DNA of 63,061 bases, filler included, from Platydemus manokwari (GCA_037951405.1; 5 parts of 5 records of this genome joined end to end with filler, not necessarily neighbours in it); one strand, 5' to 3'. Positions 38,207-53,886 are shown, numbered from the whole stretch's first letter. Notes: generated by a model from the letters alone, not told the origin. Numbers and translations are program-made.

Positions 38207-39289
38207 AAATTTAATTTCGTTTTTGTATTAAGCACCAAAAAGTTAAATAAAAAACTATCAAAGCTAGTTGCATTACAAGAACTATAATAAAATCAAAAAA
38301 CAGCACATTCATACTGTTATAATAGATGTGCATAATCAATTAAGTAATTATTTGAAGATTATCGTAAAGATAAATATTTTTCTTCAAAATAAATTAAGTT
38401 GTAATTAATCTTATTAAATATTTTAGGCATATTACCAATGGATTACAATCGATTATAAGTTATGTACCAAAGTAAAATAATAAGTGGATTTATGATAAAT
38501 CTTGTAATTAATGCTGATTATATCATTAGAGGTATCTTATAATCATTGCTCAATGAAGGCTCCAAACTTTAATACATGGGACTAGAGAATGCTTAGACTT
38601 CTGATGTAACAAGTAATGAATAATTATTTAATAAAAGTAAAATTATTCTAAATCCTAAACTTAAATATTCGTGTGAATTATCAAGTAATATAAGCACCGA
38701 TAAGAAAGTATTTAGAATGTTCTTGACAAACTGTTTATGTAATGCATAAAGTAATCCTAAATATTTTATTGCGAAAACATTTTTAAATTTAATTCAAATA
38801 AATAGATATTGATATCTAGTGTTCCGAAATGTTGCTTAAACACATGATAGCTCAAAACAAGCCTAATAACTAATATTCGGTATAAAATCAAAGATTAGTA
38901 AATGCAATTAAGAGTATACTACAATTGATACTTAGTATAGTAAGCACCATAATTAAATTTCAAGACGATTAACAGATACTTTTAAATTTATAAATATTAA
39001 AAAATTAACAAATATCAATTCAAAATCTAAAACTTTCATAAAACTAAAATTAGCAAAATCCTGAAATAGACAAAACCAAAGTAACTTACAAGACAAAATA
39101 TAATGCAAAATCCAAGACAAAATAATAGATAAAAATAAACAATGAAAAATACAGTTTCACGTTTAATTTTAAAAAATTACAATTCCATAGCCAAACAGAT
39201 TAATATTACAAATCAAACAAATCTTGCAACAAGAAACAAATTATAATGTAATTAAAAATAAATGATTTATTAATATACAAAATAAAATA

Positions 39290-39913
39290 TTAAAAGGGTT
39301 GGGAACTTATAAAGCCTTTATCTCGTAGAAGATCTTTAACAATATTTTTCACAGTATTCAACTTTTTCCTCATTTCAAGCATGTCAGTTTTCGCATTAAC
39401 CATTTCTAAAGCTGATTTATTCAATTCTTCTTCTAATTTAGATTTATTCATTTTCTGTTTTTGTCTATAACGAAAAGCTGCATCACTATTACTAGCTTTT
39501 TTTTCATTACATATTTCACTATAAAAATTTGATTGTGTATCAAAGTCTTCAAAAAAGGCATCTACATGTTTGCGTTTTCGTTTGTTCGAAGTCTGATGGA
39601 TATATTTATATTCAGTACAAGGCGATGAGGAATCAATTTCGGAAAAAGTTCCGTTAAAAAGATCGTTAAAGTCATTAGGATCAGGCAAGGGCGCTTGACT
39701 AAGTTCTTCAATAAGCTGTGTTAATAGGGCTTCATTGAACTCACTAAAATCATCTGGTAAGTCATAGGATTGAAGGGACAATGACGAAGAGTTAGCTTCA
39801 TCCTCACAACATTCAATAATATTTTCATCATTGTTTGGATAATAATCATGTGATCCATATTTGGAAAGTTTTGGATCTGCGTCCAAAAGTAAATAATCGA
39901 TGTTTTCGAGCAT
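39290..39913 (-). CDS. atf4: ATF4/ATF5-like bZIP transcription factor, 207 aa
   Basis: First in-frame ATG at 39913 (MLENIDYLL...). Acidic N-terminal region; basic region EKKASNSDAAFRYRQKQK (ATF4: KKMEQNKTAATRYRQKKR) followed by a C-terminal zipper; ATF4-type uORF leader. Confidence 0.8.
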   Translation of the reverse strand: MLENIDYLLLDADPKLSKYGSHDYYPNNDENIIECCEDEANSSSLSLQSYDLPDDFSEFNEALLTQLIEELSQAPLPDPNDFNDLFNGTFSEIDSSSPCTEYKYIHQTSNKRKRKHVDAFFEDFDTQSNFYSEICNEKKASNSDAAFRYRQKQKMNKSKLEEELNKSALEMVNAKTDMLEMRKKLNTVKNIVKDLLRDKGFISSQPF

Positions 39914-39947
39914 TTGTATTTGAGGTTGTATATTGTAAGTTAGCCAT
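39846..39947 (-). promoter_or_regulatory. Inhibitory-type uORF2 overlapping the bZIP start out of frame (33 aa)
   Basis: ATG at 39947 (attATGg) reads MANLQYTTSNTNARKHRLFTFGRRSKTFQIWIT* and stops at 39846, inside the main CDS. Confidence 0.7.
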
Positions 39948-40048
39948 AATGAAACTAGACAAAAAACATTTAAAAGAAATTGAAATGATAGTAAATTATT
40001 ACTTATTTGGGAGCGCTTTCGCACTATTAGCAAAAATAGGTATATAAA

Positions 40049-40063
40049 CTATTTCATCATCAT
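40049..40063 (-). promoter_or_regulatory. Short uORF1 (MMMK*) in the putative leader of the ATF4-like gene
   Basis: ATG ATG ATG AAA TAG on the minus strand upstream of uORF2; a candidate 48-nt GT-AG intron (40002-39955) lies between them. Confidence 0.55.
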
Positions 40064-41339
40064 TACGAAACAAAAGTTTGAAAAACAATAATGAAACTAA
40101 ATCAATATGAAGAAACAAACATTGTTTTTTTAATAAAAATTATTTTTGAAATTTTTAAATAGTTTGTTTTTGCAAAAGATAAATAATTTTTACCGATATA
40201 AATAAGATGCAAATAGAATAATGTTCTGAAAATTATTTTATATTTTATTCATATTTTAATAATTATTTAACTTTAGAAATCGAAATCGATTAGCTTCAAA
40301 CTGTGTTTACTACTTAAATAATTTTTGTAAATAATTTTAAAAATGCAAATATAAATTTTGATGTAACTGTTTGAATAAAAAATTTATGATGGAATAATCT
40401 ATCAACTTTTGCAATTTTCCTCGAGTTTTATTAAAGACTCAGAATTAAATATTTTCAATCCTTAACAATATGTCAATTCATGTGTCGATAAATTATCCAA
40501 CTTTGTGTTTAAATTGACGGGATATCTAAAAGTTAAAACAGCTACGTGAATATTACTATTTTTGTAATTATTGGATAAGTTCTGATATCGTGATTTTAAT
40601 GTTTTCTATATAGTCATCTAATAAGCTGCCAATAATCATAGAGGTCTGAAAATTTATTTCTTGTACAACCATTTCTTGTACCATTACATTATTCTAACTT
40701 TAAATTACGAAATAATTTACTTAACTAAAAACTCAATATAAATATTTGGATGAAAACTAAAATTGTTTTGTTATTTAAAGATTCCGTACGTAAACCTTGA
40801 TAACTTGAAAATTTATGCAACTATTATAGAACGATTCCATGATTAATCAACCCATCAATCAACCCCACAATGAATCTTCTCCACAGATTAAGTCTCATAT
40901 ACAGCTAATATCTAATTTAAACTCCTCAGTCAAGCAGAGTTTAGGGCAAAATGAAGATGAAGAAATGATAAAATACACTTAAAAACATAACAACAAATAA
41001 ATTAATTACTCACTGGACTTCGAGTCAAGGTGAAAAACCAAACTAAACGCGATCAATAACAATCTATTTTGAGCTGCAACATTATGTGTACAAAAAGTAC
41101 ACACCATCAATACTAGGTAAAGTCAAAATAACGAATTTTTCATGGACGACATACAATTTTAGATTTCCATGAATATTTTACTGTATTCGCATAAACTCTA
41201 GTCATCCTTGTTGAGATAGATGACATCCAGAAGCCTAAACAAACGTTATTCGTTCAAAAACTGATTCATTATAGCCAATTACTTTTTACAATCTTAGCAT
41301 ATTTGGTTGTCGCTATTATTCATTTAATTTATATATAAT

Positions 41340-41850
41340 TTATTAAATCAATCGTTGTTATTTTTTAATTTGGTTTTCATTCAAAGCTTTCTTAATCTTC
41401 AGATTATGTTGACATCCACATACTGATTGCACTAGTTAATTTTTGAAACATATGTTGTTTCCTTTTCGTTTTTCTCAAATATATTATTGGTATTTAAATC
41501 ACATTAATTTAGATTTACAACATAGAGAACTATCATGAATCATAAATCGGCCTCTTCTAAATAAGTATCATCATTTGAAGATTTCATTTCAAGTATTCTT
41601 CAATTGTCAAAATAGATACATAAAATGTTCCCCCACCTAAATCAAAGACCAGATCATTTTGTTCAGTTCCTACTTTCTTATCCAACCCATTCGCAATTGA
41701 AGTAACGGTGGGTTGACATTCAATCCACTTATTTCACCGGAATCTTTTGTTGCTTGTATTTCATTATCATTGTAATAAACAGGTATACTCATTATTGCAT
41801 CTTTTACGGTTTCTCTAAATATGCTTCAAATATTTCTTCATTTTTTTCTT
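41340..41850 (-). pseudogene. HSP70 pseudogene fragment (ATPase domain)
   Basis: Reads, with frameshifts, KMK.IFEAYL / [33 protein letters not shown] / [13 protein letters not shown] / [14 protein letters not shown] / [11 protein letters not shown] / DTYLEE, co-linear with HSP70 [26 protein letters not shown]...[15 protein letters not shown]. Confidence 0.8.
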
Positions 41851-44012
41851 CTGATAAGATTGTTTTATTATCACCCCTACATTATTGAGTGACTTTCTGG
41901 ATCTTCTCCTCAATCTTCTGGAGAAAGTAATATTCAATAACCAACGGCATGGATTGGCAGCATGTTTGGGTCCAGACATTTCTGATTCTTTGAGGACTAG
42001 CTCTTATTTAGAACATACATGGGATTAAAATAACTAATATTTTGTGTCTTTCTATGAATATTCCACGTAAAATTTTGGAATATTTCAAACTGCTGGGATT
42101 TCATAACCTAACTAAATTCAGTAAAATCAATTTTTACCCACCCTATTATGCTTTTGCATTTGATCAAGATTTTCCAATTTTTTCTGATATGGCTAATTTT
42201 TATTTAAAATTGTATAAAGGATACTGCCGAAAGGATGACGGGCTTAATCATGCTCCCAGTTCCAGGCGAAACTCGAGCAAAATTTTTTTAGAAAAAGTTG
42301 AAATTTTAAACTTATCTCACAGTGCAAGCCTCGGTATAGAAGGCATCAATGTTCCCTTAATAATAAGTAAGTAAGTCTGCAACGATAATGAGTCAAATTA
42401 TGCTCATAGTCCCATCGAAAACTCACATAAGGAAGGTTATTCCATCAATAATAACCATTCCGGGCCCTCTAAGTCAAGCTCTCGGTCTGAAAAATGGTTA
42501 CTCAACGATCAAATATCCCCAATACGATCTTAAATATATCATTAGAACTCAGACAATTCGATAACAATCAATATAAACGCAAACGATTATAAGAATGGAA
42601 TGCCGGACGTTTCCAAACTTAATAAAAGCGATTGTAAAAGTGACCGACTCTTAAGCCCCAGTCTCGTAAACCGAAGATAACAATATGACTGAATCATATT
42701 CTCCGGTCAAAGAGACCGACTCTAAAAAAATTCAAATGAGATGAACCCACTGGATGAGAGTCAAAACCTGTAGCTACAAAAGGATATCAAAGTTGAATTC
42801 CAAGAAGTCAAACTCCCAACAGAGATCAAAGATAATAGTGAACCGATCCCAAACAATATTGACTTAAATGAGACCACCGAAATTACCAACGCAAATAGTG
42901 CGAAAAAAATCTTCGGTTAAGTCAACGTTGCAAAAGACCGACTATCGTCCGATGGCAGACATTACCATTCAACACGCCGAGAACTTCAAATGATTCGATC
43001 AAGAAATCGAGGCAAAATAACGACCCTGCTTTGAACCATCGAAACATATCACACAAGATTCGCCAACTATCCAATCTGAGATCAAAGGGAAGACTAAGAC
43101 TATGGGAAACTAAGCGAATCTCTGACAATAGTTCTTCTCAGTCAAAGAACAGTTCAAAGTTAAAATCACCGAAACTCGATGACATTTCCAAGTAAAAAAA
43201 ACAATCTGAGGAAATAAAGGCTGGGAAACTTATAATGACCAAGAGGTTTGGGTAAAGAAACAAACATCTCTACCCACCCGATGACTATGACTCTGGCGAT
43301 AGCCACGAGAGTGGTGACAGTTCCAGAGACTATGAATAGGATCCTGGTACATATGCCGCTATTGTTAATGAACGAATGAGATTCTACGAGTATTTCAGCA
43401 ACAAATCAATAGACTATCTTTTATATTTAGAGTTGATGACGAGAGAAATATTATGCCAGGTTTATCTGACTAACTCGCTAAGCAATGTATATAAATAGTA
43501 ATTATTAATTGTTGTTTGTTGTCTTTCTTTATTTGAGTTTTATATTTTAATATTGTTTGCCATTACATAGCCATTTTTTCTTCCTTTTTATGATCTGTTA
43601 AAATGAATTTAAATTTGTTTATTATCATGAATTTTTCATTCAGCTCATGCCCCCCTCATATGTATAGCTAGTTAATACATTCTGGAAATTTAAAATTAAA
43701 TTTAAACTTCAGTTGATGGGTTTTTTGTCAAAAGATTGAAATGAGTTCAATAATTTAATTAAATAATTTTCATACGAAAGGTTTATAAGGAGATTGAATG
43801 TTTTAATTAATTGAGAGCCTCAGCAAGTTTATTTTGCGTAATCAACTTTTACAGTGTTAAAGCATTAGAGCGATATGGTATCATTAATAGAACAGAATAT
43901 GATAATAATAATGATCATAACTCAAAATAATAATATTATAATAGAATCAGCTTATAAAAATAATACGAAAAAACTTATTTTATTTTATCAAGGTTAATTA
44001 TTAGAAAGATCT

Positions 44013-46665
44013 TTATAAATCCAAATTCATGTAATGGCCGAATAAATCTGGATAATTGAATATTTCCAGGAAAGATATTTTGAAGTGCTTAGCAAAACCA
44101 TTCAGAGAAGTGGATTGAATAAGCTTGTAAGTTAATTCGCTGCAAATTTTCTACAACAACAATTTCAAATAGATAATTTAAATAAAGAGATGTTAAAATG
44201 GCTTACTTTAGTTGCTTCAGACGTATTGATAGTTTCAATAGTCTTGAAATTATGACGCTTAGCTAAATCAATGGTATATTTTTCGATAAAATATAGCAGT
44301 TGAATTGCAGAGGAGCTTTTCAAACCATTTGACAAAGCAACAATCAATACACAGAGTTTCGGAATTCTCAACTGATGCATTGTCCGGGGTTTGCAATAAT
44401 ACAAAAAACCTTGCAAAATATTTTCGGGATTGACTTCAAAATGTTCGTCTTCATTTTCCAGCATATAATTTGAACAGTCTTCTGACAACTGTACAGCCAG
44501 AATAGCATTAGATTTTAAATCTCTAATGCAAAACGAACAACGACTTTGTAATGCCCAATCATAGATCTCAGATACTACATCAACAAATACCTGAACCGAA
44601 ACATTAAGATATTTCACGAGAAGATCTTTAGTATAAAAATTCTTGACCAAAAATCCAATAATCTCATCTTTATATTCGCCCTCAATCGGTTCCACGATGA
44701 AATTATTGTTGATGAATTCAGTCAAGCTTTTTCTGGGGTGAATGTTACACACTGATGTCGATTGTAGTAAAATGGAATCGATTATGTCTCCAATAATGAA
44801 ATTATACAGAAAGACTTCTGTAGTACAAAAGAAACCCTTCCTATTAAGATCGGCAATGCAAATAACAATCGCTATTGAATCGCCTCCGATTTCGTAAAAA
44901 TTTGTCGACTCAGTTATATCATCACAATACTTAGCTAAATGTCGGACCAAAATGTGAAATATTAATTTTCGATTGGAAATTGAATCCGGAAATAAAGTTT
45001 CATCCAAATTAGCTTTTTGGAAGTCTTTGGTCAATCTTGAACGATTTTTTAAGGGTTTCGATTTCGTTTCTATAATTTTATTATTGAAAATAATCTTCGA
45101 TGCAATTGATGATAACAACTTTCTGTCGGGTTTCATTGACTGAGACTGCATTGGAATGCTGTCGATATATTCCAATCGGGGAAGAATGATTCCTGGTAAA
45201 GTTCTCAATAGATTATTTATAATCTCATTTTTTGCTTGGATTTTATTAATATTTTTATTTTTTAGAGACACAAACGAAACCAAATGGCTTTTGTCGTCGT
45301 TCATCAAATGAACAGTGAAGCAGTTTTCAACACCACAATGAAGCATCACCGCAGCAGTTACATCCTTCATGAAGACTTTCTTTCCATTTATTTTAACCAT
45401 GTCATCCATTCTTCCACAAATATATAATTTTTTATCATCGATAAAGCCAACATCTCCCGTTTCAAAAGAATGCCCACAATTCGGAGAAACATTTTCCCCA
45501 ACGACAATTACTTCTCCTTCATTTTCCAAGTCAGAACTGATTAATATCTTATTGTTTGATATTGGCAATCCAACCGACAAGAAGCCATTCTTTGAATGTT
45601 TATCTACATCCTCTAAAGTCATTAATATTTCACAACATACATCGCCACACACTTCAGTAGAGCCATATAGGTTCACCAGTCGGCAATTATTAATATTAAA
45701 ATCTTCAAAAAACCGCTTTGCAACTCGTGGAAATAGCATTTCTCCACTGGCGACGACAGTGGAAAGCGTAATCAAAGAATCCACTATCTCGGGGTTAACA
45801 TTAATTTGATTCATCCACTTTTGTAAAAGCGATGGAACTGTCAATAACCATGTTACCTTATATGTCTCTATTATTTTTGATAAATATATCATATCGCATG
45901 ATTGCACGGGGGAAACTATGACCATAGTTGCACCAGACAGCAAAGAACTCAAACATTCGACAATGTTATCGACAAACATGAAGTTTGTTCGATGACAAAT
46001 GACTTCATTGGTTTTATACGGAAGGTAACGCCATTGCCAAAATAAGCGGTTAAATATCTGACAGTTCGTCAAAGTCAAAACTTTTGGTGTACCAGAACTG
46101 CCTGATGTGGTTAAAATGACTACTGGATTATCTCGGGAATGAGGAACTAAGCGTTCATGATTTAAAATATTAGGACAGAAAATCCAATCAGAATTGACTA
46201 ATAAACTTTTCACTGGCATAACTTCAACTTCATTTTCTGTCTCAGAATCAAGTATAAGATCAATAAACGAGTTGTCGTGAATAATAAGAGATATGTTACA
46301 GCTTCTAATCATTTGTTTTAATTGGTCACTGTTTAAGCTGGTGGAAACCGGAACAATAACCAAACCGAGTTTGAGACAGGACAAAATTGTTATCAGTCGT
46401 TTGAAACCTTCATCTAAGAAAATGCCAACGTGGAAGTATTTCCAGTTCTTTTCGTTGGAATTGAAGAATTTCAATATATTTCTCGCAACGGTATTTGCCT
46501 GATTATTTAAGTCGTAAAATGTTATGCGACAATCATTATGAATAGCTGCGATATCATTTTCTTGGCCACTGGCTTTGGAATTCAGACAATGCATCTCGAA
46601 ATATGAGGCCAAATTATGACATTGATCGAATCGTTCAACTTTGCCAAACGAATATTGAGAATTAT
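44013..46665 (-). CDS. nrps: Ebony-like stand-alone non-ribosomal peptide synthetase (adenylation - thiolation - AANAT-like amine-selecting domain); putative beta-alanyl-monoamine synthetase
   Basis: Large exon 46665-44207, 56-nt intron, last exon 44150-44013 (KICSEL...HYMNLDL*). A-domain cores: TTSGSSGTPK, FVD, SGE, NLYGSTE, ETGD, GRMDDMVKING, KPDRKLL. Carrier domain NFYEIGGDSI (phosphopantetheinyl Ser). C-terminal domain with NFYTKDLL and NTSEATK (Ebony SFYxKADL, NTSPLTQ). True start codon unresolved. Confidence 0.9.
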
Positions 46666-47553
46666 CTACAAAAACAACCTTTATTAAGCATTAGAAAATT
46701 ATAAAATATAAAAAATGAATCTCCTTTTTGATTAAAACAATAAAAATGATTATTTCTTTCATGAATTGATTTATTAAAACAAATTTTGAAATAATTTCCT
46801 CTTTCAAGCGGGAAAACCACACTTCTTAAATGATATAAATACATTAATTTACTTGGTAAATTAGAAAAACAAGAAAATATAAAATACAGACGGCTGAACA
46901 GCAATATTTTAAGTATTCTTTTAAGCATTTCATTTTGTATCGATTATATTTTTTTAATTTCACTTGTAAAGTATTTTCTCCTTTTGGAAACCGCAGAAAA
47001 TTAGATATTTCATTGAACTCATACCGATACCGTCTCCGATAGATATCTACAATCTTCGTTATTTACTTATATTCCATTTCTGTAAGCATAAAACTTGATT
47101 TTAAAAATAATTTGACCGATAATTTTTCGAGAGGTTCGTCTGCTCTAAGAGTGGATATTAATTAATCAATGAGATCATTTTATTCATTCTCTGTATTTGT
47201 TTGTTATGAATTTAATTGAATAAAAAATATTTTTAAATTCACCTTCTCAGACGCGTTGGCCGTCATTTATTGGCTCAGATCATTTTTGCAGTTTTCGATA
47301 ATTCAAGTTATTCCATGACACTCATAAGAAACTTTAGCCTATTTGATTGATTAATTAAAAATTCCAAAAATCATTTTTGGACCTTACGAAAAATGAAATC
47401 AATAATTGTCTTTTTGGTTTCGCTCATACATGTGTATTGGGGTGGGGAGGGGGTTAAGAAAACAATTTTTAATAAAGAAACAGTACCGTACTTCAAGAGA
47501 TTTTGCATATTCGTATAAATATTTTAAAAATATGGATGACACTATTAGATATA

Positions 47554-47610
47554 CAAGGTGATCCAAAAGTAGGTTTACAGATATTAAAGTATGTGTGCCA
47601 GAATGTTAGA
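47554..47610. mobile_element. Truncated left end of the Tc1/mariner MITE seen at 26295
   Basis: TA-CAAGGTGATCCAAAAGTAGGTTTACAGATATTAAAGTATGTGTGCCAGAATGTT matches the start of 26295-26517. Confidence 0.65.
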
Positions 47611-50189
47611 ATATATATAATAAACATCTTTTTTTACACAAACAAATAAATACAAAATTTTGGAAAAAAATAAAATAGCCAAAGTAATTTCAAGAAACAA
47701 TCCAATGGCAAAACACGGTTTATGATTCGTCACGAACAAATAAAGATATTTCAAACATTTCCTATCAATTGTGATATAATTAAATCATAAACTTGATTGA
47801 AAAAATTTAATTCTCAAAGAAGTACTCTTCACCTTTTCATATATCGATCTCTCGCAAGAAATTGTTCTTTTAATCACTACATCTGTTCAATTTGCTCTAG
47901 CAGATTTGTAGTGATTTTCATTAAGAGCTCCTACTAATCTAGAGGCATTTTGGGGTTATATGAATTTATTAAAACAACTTCGAAAAAATGAATTTTTTTT
48001 CGTTCAGATAATTTGTGAAGTACATAGAAAAACCAAATTATTAATATAAAATATCAAAATTAATATTAATCACAGCACATGGAGTTAATAAAGAAAATTT
48101 GTAACGATTTATTCAAGAACATTTATCATTGAAATTCATTGTTAGATTATTTGAAGTAATGTTAACACGCTTTCCTTTTTTAAATATTTTATTTATTTAA
48201 TATGGATTTATATTTTTATATATTTTGTTTACTCAACATTTATTTTTTCCCTCAGCACATGAATCAACTAATTAATTGGTACAAAATTCATCGGACATTG
48301 AATCAATCCAGATAAAATCCCGATATTATTTTATAACTATTCCATACATTACCAGTTGTACTTATTATCCTGAAGAAAAGAAGGGAAAGTTTTTTATTCG
48401 TTTACATATTTTAAATAAATCGACAGAGTGCTTACGGTGATTACTGAATGACTACTTGAATAAAATATTGTTAATCTCATAAAATTTTAACTATATACAG
48501 CATGAATACTATTCACAAATCTAATGGAAAAATTGCTTGAAAAACCTTTTAAACCCCCCCCACAATTTCATTTTATATCAATTTATTATTAAAATCCCAA
48601 AATATTAGCTTTTATCGGCCAAGACATTTGTTGGGAATTACGTTATCTTATATTATTTGAATAAAAATGGATTTCATAATTTCACAAATATATTGGATGA
48701 ATAGTCATTAATAAAACTTCCTATAAATAGTTAATCATTAATTTAACTTCCCCTTTAAAACTAGCAACCTATTTATGATGAGAATTAATCATTGCAATTT
48801 CTGGTCTTTTGAATTTACCAAGACACTATACCAGATGAAAATCATAGATGAAAATTATCAATCAAACAATGCACTCAATTAAAGTTCAAAGCTTACACCA
48901 AATGATAAATACGAACGCATTAGGATTTGCGAAAATAGAAGGGCGGGTTGTAATGGGTTTATTTGATTTGGCTATCTATTAATTATAAATGGAAACTTTT
49001 TTAAAAAAACCATAAGATCAAATGAAGCATCAATAGTTACTGGGTTTTTCAAAACAAATTTAAATACACTTAAAAAATATTTATAATATCATTTTGAACT
49101 TTTATTTCTTCTGCCTAAAATGAAAATAAATATTTTAAATAAATAAAATTTTTAACAATTGAAAATAAACTTTTGATATCAAATCGCACTTATAAATTAT
49201 ATAGTTTAATATATTGTCAATTACCGAATTAATCAAGTGATGAGCACCTATCTATCATCAAATGACTCTGAAGTTGAAAAACACATCTTAATATGCATCT
49301 TCTATAGATCTTATAAAAAAATAAAACTCTAAACAAAATTATTGATAAAATTATTTTATTAATACCTCTATTTATAAAAAGAAATTAAAATTAGCATGCA
49401 CTTCATAAATAATTTATTGTTTTTAGCCTAAACACTATAACCAGTTAGCCGTCAAAATGATTTATACACAACATATTTCATGGTTTTAAATAATTATTAT
49501 AAATCTATATCTATTCGATTTCATATTGATTTTTATTATCACATACAACTACATCAAATTTAAGTTGCTAAACCAGGCTTAGGTCAGTTGGTGGGATGAA
49601 ATAATCATTATACATTCAATCGAATTAAATTCTGATATATTTTGCAAGTATTTATGCTATGGTTGTATTTTCCGGGATTATTTATTCATTTTGTATATAA
49701 TTCGATTTAATTTTATTTTGTAACATAGTTTTTTAGATTTATAAAAATTAAATGACACTCAACATGTTGTGTAGGCTTATATTTATATTTCTAGTCTCAG
49801 TATGAGACGTTATAATGTCATAAAAGAAGTTATGAAAGTAAAGGACAAAAATATTTATTTCGGTTGAATTAGATGATTGAATTTCTTTATGAATTAAGGT
49901 GGTATAATGAACTAAATAATGCTATATGGTTTATTTATGAAAAGGCGGTAGAATGTATTCACGTATGTTAGCGACAAATAATTCATTAAATGCGCACTGA
50001 ACACATTTTTGAGTAATCAACATAAAAGGTGCATTAAATTACAATATTTAAACAAATTATCGGTTTTTAATATTCTATATTTAATTTGTTAAGAATCAAA
50101 TATTAAAACTTTAAAGATTAATTGATTTATTTTCATAGATACACAATTAATCGCTTATATTTGGAAGCTGTGCTGATTAGAATTCTGGT

Positions 50190-50470
50190 GAGCACTCATT
50201 TACCAATCATGGACTAGTATCTATTCACAGTGTGTCACTCTAACACAAAACTGCATTCATCATTGTAAATTATCTCCACGGTTTTATAATTTTCATCAAA
50301 AAATTGATCCACATACATTTCATTGAGTTCTCTCAAATTCTAACCTCCTCTTAATTGAGACTGGGTCAGATTTATACATCAATCTTTGTTCAAAATTTTG
50401 GAAGTTAAGGCACTCTTATTCTCAAACCATGTCTCTTATCCAACTCTCATAGTAAATGGATATTTTACAA
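50190..50470 (-). mobile_element. Decayed Tc1/mariner-superfamily transposase fragment
   Basis: KRRLEF...IIYNDECSFVLE*HTVNR resembles the first catalytic-Asp region IxFSDExxFxLxGxVN. Confidence 0.45.
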
Positions 50471-53400
50471 ACGTATCGATTAATGTAATATTTGGATCAA
50501 CTCAATCTGGTTCATAAAGTTTGTTATCAAATACCAGTTGTATATCCTCGTTATCCTTCTTATAAAGTTATCCTTATCTCGTAAGGAACATTTATAAATG
50601 AATTTTGGATACATAACTTTTCAATTTCCTAACAAATTCTAATAATTTTCTTCCCAGTGTAGTGTCGATATTTTTTATGCTAAATATTCATTTAAAAAAC
50701 TAAGTTACTATCCTAATAATTAATAATTTTCATAGCGGGAATATATGTCATGATATCGGTAAAAGATTTTGGAAATATTTTTGGAAGTTTTTAAAGAAAA
50801 CTATGAATATATTGCTTGTCCATTTTTTATTTGAAGAGATTGAGAAGAAATACTGAGAATTGTTTTTGTGAATTTTTAAGATTGCGAAAAAAATTAATTT
50901 TGTCTAAAATCTTTTTAATTCGTATTTAAAATTTCAGTATTGATTTTATTTCAACTTTGGTTAAAACAACAATACAAACTGTTCTTTACAATAAATAACG
51001 CAAATTCCATAAATACATTTTTATACCTCTAATATATTTTTCAATTCCATATTTTGCGAAAATTGGGTTTAGAAAGCTAGTCTGGATTCGAAAAGTATGG
51101 ATTGAGTATTGATAGGCAGAATTTTTATAGGAATTTTCATCAGTAGACACATACACACTTTTTGTCGTAATTATAAGTCCTCTGAAAACTGCTTTAATTT
51201 CGTTGTTGTCTAATATTTACTAACACATAATGCCAATAATTCCTAATCTAATCAAAGTCAAATTAAGCTTGGTAAATTTAGAATAAGAAAATATTATCCA
51301 ATGACAGTTCAGTATTTAACAATATTAAAAAAGACAAAGAATTAAATATACTTTCCAATCTCATATTAATTGGATAAATATTGTTAAATGGATTTAGATA
51401 CAAACATGAAGAATTAAGTAAATCTAATTGGATAAAAATATTAATGCAGACTCAAGATTTCAAACACTATCAATAATACTTTTATATATTATTTGATTTG
51501 TAAATTTTTATGTGCGGTGTTTATCTAAATAAATTAACCAGTCAAGGATCATTTAGAATTACAAAAATATGAATGCCATCCATTGAAATAAAAGCAAGAT
51601 GTTGGATAAAAACGCCTACCAAGGAAGCAGATAAAACTTATTCAAAATATCTGGATCCAAAGTCACAAAAATTTAAAAACCGAAACAGCTATGATTTGAT
51701 ATAAATGGTTTTTTAAATCATTTTAATCATTCCAAAATTAATGACTTCAAAAGTTATTAAATGATTAAACTGATATTTAAATAATGGTACTAAGAATTGA
51801 GTATCCCATTTAGCTACCTTGTAGATTAAAATTGAGAATCAGAAATGATTTTTAATTAAGTCAGTTGATCTGTACTCTCGATAAATTAGATGTGCTGTAT
51901 ATGCTTTACAACTTACCATAAGTAAAGACTCAAATGAAATATAATTGGCCTTATCAACTAAATATGAAAGACAACAAGTTCAGACAGGCTTAAAATTTTT
52001 TGAATTATTGATTTTTCTGCAATTTTTCTGACACAATCTTCCTAATCTTGTGACGTTTATTCGTTATATTTGATGACAAAACATCTTGATATAAAAGAAT
52101 TTTATAAAAGTAAATCATTACTTGATCTATCTCGTTTTAATAATTCTACATATTCATCTGTCGTCAATAACAGCATTTAACATGTCACAAACGTCCAATC
52201 ATTATTTGGAAAATATGAAAGATTTGCTTAATATTAAATATATAGCTAATCACACGTCGAACATCTCCAAAGGAAGATCTGCAGAAATTCATTGAATATT
52301 TAAAAATGATTCGCTGTGGAACATCTTGTTACCGTATAATTTTTAAATAGCATATATCTTTCATGTCTGCGAATAAATTTATTGGAATCTAGTGAAATGT
52401 CAGATATTGTTATTGGAATCAGATAAATATGTTAAACCATTTAGGAAACAAATGAAGTCATGATTTAATTTCACGTATATAATTCCTTTATATTCAGAAA
52501 TGTTGCCATGAAATTTCAGAAAATCTCATGCAAAATATTAGAAAATTTTGATTGAACTAATTTTCAGATTTAATAAGCAGCGTATTCAATAATTTATGAC
52601 GACAAAATATAAGTGGAGATTATCAAGGCAAGTCCGCAATAAACGGTTGGTTTTAAATTATGGTTTTGGATTAGTTTCCATTGAAACGTGAATGATTCAC
52701 ATCATTTGTTTTGTTTATTTGGAATGTTATATCAGCGCGATAACTAGTGGATACAAACATCCACAGTGATAATAAATATATTTACAAATCTTAAACCAGT
52801 CATTCAATTATGTCTGATATTAAAAAAATTCTTTTACAAAAATTTTAAAAAAAAACAAAGTGAAACATTGATATGGAAAAGCCAAATATATTCTTCATCA
52901 GATTGGATTGCCTGATATCAAATACTTGAATCAATTAATGATTATTTCCCATCACATTGTTTCCAATTGGCAAATAATTATTTACAATTATTATTGATTT
53001 TTTTTAATAATAAATAATGCAATATCGGTTATTTATCAAGTGGATTTTTGTAGAAATTAAAAATTATTTGAAAATAATTTTATAATATTTAATAACGACA
53101 ATGAAAATGAAACTAAAAATGATAATAATTATAATTAGTAATTAACAATATATTAATAATTCGTGGGATAATTAATATTAACAATAACAAAAAAACAATA
53201 AAATAAATAATTATTGATTTTAGCAATAATAAATAACATTATTATATTATATTATTATTACAGTGATTATCATAATCACAATAACATTATTAATAATATA
53301 AATACTAATGACCTAAAAATTTTAATTATATTCACATTATAATAAATATAATTAATAATATTAGTAACTACATGCATTATTAGAATAGATCAGGGTTGCG

Positions 53401-53886
53401 CAAACTTTTTAAATTGCGCCCCCACTTTTATTATATTAACTACTGACGCTCTTAAAACAGGCCCATAATAAATCATAACTCCCATATGAAATACTATTTA
53501 CATGAAATAAATATCTTCACAACAAGATATAATTCAAATTATGCTTTTTTATTAATTAATAATTTTATCACAAAATAAAAATTGTAGTTATTTGAAAAAA
53601 TTAAAGCCACAATAAAATTAAATTTTATTAAATAGACAAATATCATTTATTAATATAATAAATAATGTAAAATAATCACTCATGATCTCCATAATAATCA
53701 TAATATTAATAATAATAATAATAATAATATAACAATCTTAATGATAAAGACATTATATTTACAATAATTTTGTTACAATAATTATAAAAAATAAAATAAT
53801 AAATAATTAAATTTCAGTGGTAGACAATGTTATGGTATTATATAATTATTTTATTAATATCAGAAATACATTAGTAAAAATAATAA

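What the first reader, a model, noticed from the sequence alone, without database searches (positions are those of the whole stretch)
44013..46665. Animal stand-alone NRPS (Ebony type): candidate beta-alanyl-monoamine signal synthetase
Seen: an intact A-T-C-terminal-domain enzyme with a short spliceosomal intron, so it is a host gene rather than bacterial contamination. Established: NRPSs are rare in animals; Drosophila Ebony makes beta-alanyl-dopamine/histamine, and the flatworm NRPSs of Schistosoma and Schmidtea make beta-alanyl-tryptamine, which acts in sexual development. Inference: this gene produces a dipeptide-like hormone or pheromone; if it is a divergent paralog, the product may be new.
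Basis: partly seen in the sequence, partly recalled or inferred. Interest (0 to 1): 0.8.

Follow-up and report, generated by a model that had tools for sequence, protein, structure and literature searches.

The report
Planarian-type Ebony-like beta-alanyl-amine synthetase gene
This is a real, spliced animal gene for a one-module Ebony-type peptide synthetase; its closest named relative is the planarian enzyme already shown to make the sex-development signal beta-alanyl-tryptamine, so it is a new member of a known family, not a new kind of enzyme.

Summary
On the minus strand, a stop-free exon (46665-44207), a 56-nt GT-AG intron (44206-44151) and a last exon (44150-44013) encode 864 residues. 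The order is adenylation domain, carrier domain with a GGDS serine, then a C-terminal domain. That C-terminal domain's only clear match among solved structures is the amine-selecting domain of Drosophila Ebony (profile E 1.7e-18).

There is no canonical condensation domain and no PQQ repeat, so this is not AASDH and not a modular NRPS. The motif-anchored substrate signature (VDVSVSLGDK) follows the beta-alanine pattern. The same pattern appears in a tapeworm homolog, a fungal homolog and AASDH-like proteins.

The closest named relative is Schmidtea mediterranea NRPS, roughly 55-65% identical by eye, with the same length and C-terminal tail. That enzyme makes beta-alanyl-tryptamine. The only close database relative is an unnamed 877-aa protein (58.5% identity). 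A tapeworm protein comes next at 24%. The host is therefore most likely a poorly sampled triclad flatworm.

Two things are unresolved. The exon has no in-frame start codon before conserved residues, so a tiny 5' exon is missing. And planarians have a second, gut-expressed paralog whose sequence I could not obtain, so the product (tryptamine conjugate or another) is inferred.

Verdict: new member of a known kind; moderate-low interest.

The parts
44207..46665 (-). Large coding exon (2459 nt). It starts in phase 1 after the acceptor tttttgtag and ends at the donor AAA|GTAAGC. It encodes the A domain, the T domain and most of the amine-selecting domain.
   Evidence: tblastn of P0001 gives a single HSP over 46687-44207 (58% identity).
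46666..46667 (-). Putative 3' splice acceptor (AG) of an unlocated upstream intron. An AG sits at the same position and phase in the homologous locus L001 (ccttcttcag|AA).
   Evidence: There is no in-frame ATG upstream of 46594 within the exon, although conserved residues are encoded there. This is an inference, not shown by RNA.
44151..44206 (-). 56-nt GT-AG spliceosomal intron (GTAAGC...TTGTTGTAG).
   Evidence: Read-through stops after 13 codons. The homologs are continuous across the junction: EATK|KICSE in this gene, EATKKLCSE in P0001, EATK/KICS in Smed-NRPS.
44013..44150 (-). Last coding exon: 45 codons plus the TAA stop at 44015-44013. It encodes the end of the amine-selecting domain.
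   Evidence: The tail ...GHYMNLDL matches P0001 (...GHYMILDL) and Smed-NRPS.
45110..46582 (-). Adenylation (A) domain with NRPS-type core motifs: TSGSSGTPK, FVDNIVE, NLYGSTE, TGD, GRMDDMVKINGKK and the A10 lysine in SMKPDRK.
   Evidence: Pfam AMP-binding E 2.6e-44. NCBIfam amino-acid adenylation domain E 2.5e-43 and a DltA-length match over residues 11-501. Signature VDVSVSLGDK.
44837..44923 (-). Core of the thiolation (carrier) domain. The phosphopantetheine-attachment serine of the FYEIGGDS motif is the codon at 44878-44876.
   Evidence: Pfam PP-binding 17.5 bits, below the 20.8-bit cut-off. G-G-x-S is invariant in all four aligned homologs. The serine is marked as conserved in Ebony, Smed-NRPS and Sm-NRPS.
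44207..44689 (-). Amine-selecting (AS, aaNAT/GNAT-like 'atypical condensation') domain, the part in the large exon. It continues in 44150-44016.
   Evidence: PDB search: the only hit for the single sequence is Ebony 6DYM at E 1.3e-5; with a 4-sequence profile it reaches E 1.7e-18. Foldseek top hit is 6DYM, followed by dopamine/arylalkylamine N-acetyltransferases, but the model is poor (pLDDT 52.6). Atlas features of this part are nearest to arthropod aralkylamine N-acetyltransferases.

Best explanation
This is a nuclear gene of an AT-rich flatworm, most likely a triclad planarian. It encodes a single-module, Ebony-type nonribosomal peptide synthetase with domain order A-T-AS.

Proposed mechanism:
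1. The A domain adenylates beta-alanine.
2. Beta-alanine is transferred as a thioester to the phosphopantetheine arm on the GGDS serine of the T domain. The arm is installed by a separate PPTase.
3. The C-terminal aaNAT-like amine-selecting domain binds a free biogenic amine.
4. The amine attacks the thioester and releases a beta-alanyl-amine.

By similarity to Smed-NRPS the most likely product is beta-alanyl-tryptamine (BATT), the somatic-gonad niche signal that triggers planarian reproductive development.

Shown here: the gene structure, the three domains, and homology of the tail to Ebony's AS domain. Inferred: beta-alanine as substrate (from the signature pattern), tryptamine as the amine (from its relation to Smed-NRPS, which could be orthology or paralogy), expression, and the 5' exon.
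For: Gene model.
Domains: A domain; T-domain GGDS invariant; AS domain matches Ebony 6DYM at E 1.7e-18 and nothing else credible, with aaNAT-like neighbours by fold and by features. Whole-protein Atlas features are nearest the arthropod 'beta-alanyl-bioamine NRPS ebony family' cluster (0.98).
Substrate signature: VDVSVSLGDK follows the pattern (V/I)D..(V/I/L)S.(G/A)DK. Tapeworm P0002, fungal P0004 and AASDH-like P0008/P0005/P0012 share it; canonical alpha-amino-acid domains start with D instead. Ebony and ACSF4/AASDH are both documented beta-alanine activators (PMC10531068).
Tree: this gene + P0001 100/100, then + tapeworm P0002 99/96, separate from AASDH-like proteins and CoA ligases.
Smed-NRPS: the sequence printed in PMC11214079 SI Fig. 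S2 matches block by block, about 67% in the TSGSSGTPK-to-A4 block and 78% around IQLLYFIEK...ETINTSEATK by my count. It has the same length class (867 vs 864+ residues) and the same tail. Smed-nrps is required for BATT synthesis.
Against: - There is no RNA evidence: only one DNA run holds the sequence.
- The start codon and first exon were not found (one search gives 37 phase-compatible candidates).
- S. mediterranea has a second, gut-expressed nrps paralog that is not needed for BATT.
- The Smed comparison rests on OCR text with visible errors.
- The signature positions were anchored on motifs from memory of GrsA-PheA numbering, not on a structural alignment.
- The same signature occurs in AASDH-like proteins, so it speaks to beta-alanine only and says nothing about the amine.
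- The AS-domain model is of low confidence (pLDDT 52.6).
- No true Ebony or Sm-NRPS full-length sequence could be put in the tree.
Confidence: 0.72

Rival explanations
1. Same enzyme class, but this copy is the counterpart of the planarian gut-expressed paralog or a lineage-specific paralog. It would conjugate beta-alanine (or another small acid) to a different amine and have a non-reproductive role such as amine inactivation or a digestive or defensive metabolite.
For: Issigonis et al. report a paralogous nrps expressed in the gut whose knock-down leaves BATT unchanged. This gene, P0001 and Smed-NRPS are about equally distant from each other (about 55-60%), which could reflect either speciation or old duplication. 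Position 239 of the signature differs among them (V/I/T/A).
Against: Length, N-terminal layout and the C-terminal tail (KICS...GHYM.LD) all match the gonadal Smed-NRPS. A weak hint comes from the reverse cloning primer for the gut paralog. It translates to RQKWVAE, where this gene has LQKWMNQ and gonadal Smed-NRPS has LLQKW..Q (my translation). Neither gut primer matches the window within 3 mismatches.
Confidence: 0.2
2. A decaying or non-functional copy: the large open frame survives but the gene lacks a usable start or promoter and is not expressed.
For: No in-frame ATG at the 5' end of the exon. No RNA run holds it. At least 7 kb of AT-rich sequence without open frames lies upstream.
Against: There are 864 codons without a stop across two exons, clean GT-AG sites, all catalytic motifs and the carrier serine. 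An AG at the same position and phase in the homologous locus L001 points to a conserved intron rather than a truncation. The lack of RNA runs is expected for a species with a single public run.
Confidence: 0.05
3. An AASDH/ACSF4-type beta-alanine activator, an acyl-CoA ligase, or a bacterial or horizontally acquired modular NRPS fragment.
For: The A domain alone scores against DltA, CoA ligases and bacterial NRPS modules. AASDH-like proteins share the same signature pattern.
Against: No PQQ or beta-propeller repeats, no PF00668 condensation domain and no thioesterase or reductase domain. The tail is Ebony's AS domain. The A domain clusters with flatworm A-T-AS proteins, apart from AASDH-like proteins (94/65) and CoA ligases (99/96). 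The spliceosomal intron and host-like base composition also argue against it.
Confidence: 0.02

Closest known systems
Schmidtea mediterranea NRPS (Smed-nrps, SMESG000023215 / SMEST023215002.1; Issigonis et al. 2024, PMC11214079)
   Same: A-T-AS architecture; 867 vs 864+ residues; shared blocks (AAIHND, TSGSSGTPK, FNRLFWQW, FVDNIVECLS, TVPSLLQKW, LVNLYGSTEVCGDV, IQLLYFIEK.TIDLA, TIETINTSEATKKICS, GHYM.LD); roughly 55-65% identity by eye on the OCR text. It is the enzyme required for beta-alanyl-tryptamine synthesis.
   Different: It comes from a different species: no Smed primer matches within 3 mismatches and only one public run holds the window. Orthology versus paralogy is untested. Expression and product are unknown here.
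P0001 (unnamed 877-aa protein from a Logan contig of SRR33002330; locus L001)
   Same: 58.5% identity over 863 residues, with the same domains and tail. An AG at the same position and phase precedes the conserved N-terminal residues.
   Different: The locus has 42% GC, against 34% for this coding sequence. The contig is continuous where this gene has its 56-nt intron, so it is either a transcript or a gene that lacks the intron. The organism is unknown.
Neodermatan flatworm NRPSs (Schistosoma mansoni Sm-NRPS, BATT pheromone synthetase; Anoplocephala perfoliata P0002)
   Same: Same A-T-AS order, GGDS serine, NTS..T motif near the C-terminus and the VD..(V/I)S.GDK signature. The A domain of P0002 is sister to this gene + P0001 (99/96).
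   Different: Only 24% identity to P0002. The parasite proteins are longer (961 and 1227 aa) with many insertions.
Drosophila melanogaster Ebony (beta-alanyl-dopamine/histamine synthase; C-terminal domain PDB 6DYM)
   Same: Architecture, beta-alanine-type A domain motifs (VD in A4, GSTE..GD in A5) and an AS domain homologous at E 1.7e-18 by profile. The nearest Atlas cluster is the arthropod ebony family.
   Different: About 25% identity in the AS domain. The A2 and A6 motifs have diverged and the A6-A7 segment is shorter in the planarian-type proteins. Ebony's biological role is amine inactivation and cuticle tanning, not a developmental signal.
AASDH / ACSF4-U26 (vertebrate beta-alanine-activating enzyme)
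   Same: A related A domain with the same signature pattern, followed by a T domain.
   Different: AASDH carries C-terminal PQQ-like repeats (PF13360/PF13570 in P0008 and P0012). This gene has none and has the AS domain instead.

Membership tests
Ebony-type stand-alone NRPS (A-T-AS) | N-terminal NRPS-type adenylation domain of the ANL superfamily | tested here: met
   Pfam AMP-binding E 2.6e-44; TIGR01733 amino-acid adenylation domain E 2.5e-43; core motifs A3, A4, A5, A7, A8 and A10 present.
Ebony-type stand-alone NRPS (A-T-AS) | Beta-alanine-type specificity signature: no Asp at position 235, Val/Ile-Asp at 235/236, Ser301, Asp331, Lys517 | tested here: met
   The motif-anchored code is VDVSVSLGDK. 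The same pattern is in P0001, tapeworm P0002, fungal P0004 and AASDH-like proteins, and is absent from the other A domains in the set. The positions were anchored from memory of PheA numbering, and no biochemical test was done.
Ebony-type stand-alone NRPS (A-T-AS) | Carrier (T) domain with the phosphopantetheine-attachment serine in GG(D/N/H)S | tested here: met
   FYEIGGDSIAIV, serine codon at 44878-44876. G-G-x-S is invariant in four homologs. The Pfam PP-binding score is sub-threshold, 17.5 vs 20.8 bits.
Ebony-type stand-alone NRPS (A-T-AS) | C-terminal aaNAT/GNAT-like amine-selecting domain in place of a canonical condensation domain | tested here: met
   Profile of four AS domains against the PDB: Ebony 6DYM at E 1.7e-18, next hit at E 0.068. 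Single sequence: E 1.3e-5. No PF00668. Fold and feature neighbours are arylalkylamine N-acetyltransferases, though the fold model is weak.
Ebony-type stand-alone NRPS (A-T-AS) | Catalyses beta-alanyl-amine formation | not testable with these tools
   Needs a holo-enzyme assay.
Planarian gonadal nrps orthologous group (BATT synthetase) | Closer to SMEST023215002.1 than to the gut paralog SMEST014974003.1 | tested here: inconclusive
   Strong full-length resemblance to the printed Smed-NRPS. The gut paralog's sequence was not obtainable. The only clue is a primer-derived peptide.
Planarian gonadal nrps orthologous group (BATT synthetase) | Expression in somatic gonadal or vitellarial niche cells together with aadc | not testable with these tools
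   No RNA run holds the sequence.
AASDH / ACSF4-U26 | C-terminal PQQ-like beta-propeller repeats after A-T | tested here: not met
   No PF13360, PF13570 or PF25292 at E <= 1. The A domain lies outside the AASDH-like clade.
Canonical modular NRPS | Condensation domain (PF00668), usually with TE or R release domains | tested here: not met
   None found. Bacterial megasynthases match through the A domain only.

The most novel reading that the evidence does not exclude
The gene is not the BATT synthetase ortholog. It would be a distinct planarian paralog (gut-type or lineage-specific) whose amine-selecting domain picks another amine, giving a beta-alanyl-amine with an unknown signalling or metabolic role in a flatworm lineage that has not been studied.
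Probability: 0.2. Interest if true: 0.5.

Novelty: new member of a known kind. Interest (0 to 1): 0.3.

Why it matters
Ebony-type NRPSs are among the few nonribosomal peptide synthetases native to animals. In flatworms their product, beta-alanyl-tryptamine, controls sexual maturation in both schistosomes and planarians. The authors of the planarian study explicitly ask for wider sampling of nrps genes across flatworms (PMC11214079). This locus provides a near-complete gene model, lacking only its first coding exon, from a species that is otherwise almost unsampled: one public DNA run, and no close protein in 5.8 billion except one unnamed relative. It is useful for comparative work on how conserved the BATT pathway is and on which AS-domain residues track amine choice. 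It does not change what is known about the enzyme class.

Tried and rejected
1. The exhaustive representative search with the whole protein was wasted. Multi-module bacterial and fungal megasynthases, with summed A-domain scores, filled all 150 rows, and no Ebony-type protein was listed apart from P0001.
2. Three word-indexed searches (whole protein, 4-sequence profile, T+AS region) returned no arthropod Ebony, no Sm-NRPS and no Smed-NRPS.
3. AlphaFold on the exon-encoded part of the AS domain with a 4-row alignment gave pLDDT 52.6. The Foldseek ranking (6DYM first) is only weak support.
4. The 5' exon was not found. tblastx and blastn between the upstream regions of the window and L001 found nothing conserved. 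A scan for ATG...GT exons in the right phase gave 37 candidates with no way to choose among them. Among the shorter ones are MYLYHLR at 46844-46823 and MLKRILK... at 46928-46853.
5. I considered a spliced-leader AUG as the start. It does not fit the phase of the 46666 acceptor, and an alternative AG at 46680-46679 would fit only speculatively. I dropped the idea for lack of evidence.
6. The run search found only one DNA run. Laying its contigs confirmed the sequence (one contig over 43534-46712 with 0 differences) but says nothing about splicing.
7. Rfam, tandem-repeat and dispersed-repeat scans of the piece found nothing relevant.
8. The Izore et al. 2019 paper on the Ebony AS domain is not held, so individual catalytic or amine-pocket residues could not be checked.
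10. I did not type the OCR Smed-NRPS sequence into a script, so the identities to it are by-eye block counts.
11. The three primer searches used scope 'window', not the piece. Outside the piece there is only N and linker, and nothing matched.

Full report
**What is in the sequence**

The piece (38207-53886) is AT-rich: 24-29% GC in the flanks and 33-35% over the gene. On the minus strand a frame stays open for 841 codons, 46690-44168. The sequence read directly shows three features:
- an acceptor-like tttttgtag|AT at 46666/46665;
- a donor AAA|GTAAGC at 44207/44206;
- an acceptor TTGTTGTAG|AAA at 44151/44150.

Removing the 56-nt intron (44206-44151) joins the frame to 45 further codons that end at TAA 44015-44013. 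Reading through the intron gives a stop after 13 codons. With splicing, the tail KICSELTYKLIQSTSLNGF...GHYMNLDL aligns to the tail of the closest homolog P0001 (tblastn 44144-44016, E 9e-10). It also aligns to the tail printed for Smed-NRPS. The spliced product from the acceptor onward has 864 residues.

**The 5' end is not complete**

Upstream of the first in-frame ATG (46594) the exon still encodes residues conserved in the relatives. This gene reads ...GKVERFDQCHNLASYFEMHC and P0001 reads ...GRIERFDHRHSLASYFEMHC. Smed-NRPS has about 30 residues before the same YEM. The frame is closed by a stop at 46690-46688 with no ATG in between.

In the P0001 locus (L001) an AG (ccttcttcag|AA) sits at the same position and phase. 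I therefore infer a conserved phase-1 intron and a very short first coding exon, about 7 codons by comparison with Smed-NRPS. I could not locate that exon. The upstream regions of the two loci share nothing, and 37 phase-compatible ATG...GT candidates exist within 3 kb. No RNA run holds the sequence. The one DNA run carries a contig identical over 43534-46712, which confirms the sequence and nothing more.

**Domains**
- A domain. Pfam finds AMP-binding at E 2.6e-44. NCBIfam finds the amino-acid adenylation domain at E 2.5e-43 and a DltA-length match over residues 11-501.
- T domain. Pfam PP-binding is sub-threshold (17.5 bits), but the FYEIGGDS motif is there and G-G-x-S is invariant in the four aligned homologs.
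- What is absent. There is no condensation domain, PQQ repeat, thioesterase or reductase domain.
- C-terminal domain by sequence. The last ~220 residues have no Pfam family. Searched against all PDB sequences, they hit only the C-terminal domain of Drosophila Ebony (6DYM and four sister entries) at E 1.3e-5. With a profile of four such tails (this gene, P0001, tapeworm P0002, Penicillium P0004) the hit rises to E 1.7e-18, and the next hit is at E 0.068.
- C-terminal domain by fold and features. An AlphaFold model of the exon-encoded part is poor (pLDDT 52.6). Its best Foldseek match is still 6DYM, followed by insect dopamine and arylalkylamine N-acetyltransferases. Language-model features of the tail alone point to the same acetyltransferase families. 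For the whole protein they point to the arthropod 'beta-alanyl-bioamine NRPS ebony family' at 0.98.

The Ebony architecture A-T-AS is therefore met feature by feature.

**Substrate signature**

I anchored the ten Stachelhaus positions on the A4, A5 and A10 motifs, using PheA numbering from established knowledge and recalled from memory. This gives VDVSVSLGDK for this gene. The other codes are:
- P0001: VDISVSLGDK
- tapeworm P0002: VDTTISFGDK
- Penicillium P0004: VDASVSYGDK
- AASDH-like proteins: (V/I)D(Q/A)S(L/V)SLGDK

The other A domains in the set begin with the usual Asp235 or have CoA-ligase-like strings.

Ebony and ACSF4/AASDH are both documented beta-alanine activators (PMC10531068), so the shared pattern supports beta-alanine as the acyl substrate. 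This is an inference, not a measurement.

**Relatives and placement**

Among 5.8 billion clustered proteins the only close relative is P0001: 877 aa, from a Logan contig of SRR33002330, 58.5% identical over 863 residues. Next comes a hypothetical protein of the tapeworm Anoplocephala perfoliata (24% identity, full length), then a Penicillium protein of the same architecture (23%).

I built an A-domain maximum-likelihood tree of 31 sequences. In it this gene + P0001 (100/100) join the tapeworm protein (99/96). AASDH-like proteins form a separate group (94/65), and acyl-CoA ligases lie across a 99/96 branch. The AS-domain match to 6DYM fills that gap.

**Comparison with the literature**

Issigonis et al. 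2024 (PMC11214079) describe Smed-nrps, an Ebony-like gene of Schmidtea mediterranea. It is expressed in somatic gonadal niche cells and is required, together with aadc, for beta-alanyl-tryptamine synthesis and reproductive development. They also mention a gut-expressed paralog that is not needed for BATT.

Their SI Fig. S2 prints Smed-NRPS (867 aa). Despite OCR noise it matches this gene block by block:
- AAIHND
- TSGSSGTPK...FNRLFWQW...FVDNIVECLS (about 67% identity by my count)
- TVPSLLQKW
- LVNLYGSTEVCGDV
- IQLLYFIEK.TIDLA...TIETINTSEATK|KICS (about 78%)
- the ...GHYM.LD end

This is far closer than Sm-NRPS or Ebony in the same figure.

The window is not S. mediterranea itself. None of three primers from the paper matches within three mismatches, and a model species would be held by many runs rather than one. 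A survey of animal NRPSs had already placed flatworm NRPSs with Ebony (PMC10531068).

**Interpretation**

The gene is a triclad-type member of the Ebony/Smed-NRPS family. The most likely mechanism runs in four steps:
1. adenylation of beta-alanine;
2. thioesterification on the carrier serine;
3. amine binding in the aaNAT-like domain;
4. release of a beta-alanyl-amine, with beta-alanyl-tryptamine the default expectation.

The main open alternative (about 0.2) is that this copy corresponds to the gut paralog or another duplicate with a different amine. A pseudogene reading is unlikely given the intact frame and motifs. AASDH, CoA-ligase and bacterial readings are contradicted by the architecture, the intron and the base composition.

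**Verdict**

The novelty is limited to a new member of a known kind in a poorly sampled flatworm.

Noticed in passing
window 39293-40048 (-): A 252-codon open frame, about 4 kb downstream of the NRPS gene on the same strand. The N-terminal half is acidic and the C-terminal end looks like a basic leucine zipper (AAFRYRQKQKMNKSKLEEELNK...). Pfam bZIP_2 scores only E 0.026. It is probably an ATF4-like bZIP transcription factor gene.
   Followed up: partly
window 42200-43700: GC rises to 0.35-0.38 with a strong excess of A over T on the plus strand. The open frames there (42012-42371+, 42367-42561+, 42899-43192+, 43169-43405-) have no Pfam match. This could be a lineage-specific gene or a UTR and remains unexplained.
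   Followed up: partly
window 47000-53886: Nearly 7 kb of 24-27% GC sequence upstream of the NRPS gene has no open frame above 76 codons, no repeats and no Rfam hit. The missing first coding exon and the promoter must lie somewhere in it or beyond.
   Followed up: partly
L001 (Logan contig SRR33002330_45242), 419-3052: The only close homolog sits on a 3178-nt contig of 42% GC, much less AT-rich than the window. It is continuous across the position of this gene's 56-nt intron, yet it has an acceptor-like AG where this gene's exon begins. The called N-terminus (MIIIEINPQLIIHVPSS) may therefore be read-through of an intron.
   Followed up: partly
proteins P0003, P0009, P0201: These proteins fuse an A domain carrying the (V/I/A)D..S..AD signature to a PLP-dependent decarboxylase domain (PF00282); P0003 and P0201 also carry a condensation domain (PF00668). 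They lie close to the Ebony-type and AASDH-like A domains in the tree. This may be a module that makes and activates its own beta-alanine-like substrate.
   Followed up: no
protein P0004 (Penicillium pancosmium, 862 aa): A fungal protein with the same A-T-AS layout, the GG.S serine, the NTS..T motif and the signature VDASVSYGDK. Ebony-type architecture is therefore not confined to animals.
   Followed up: no
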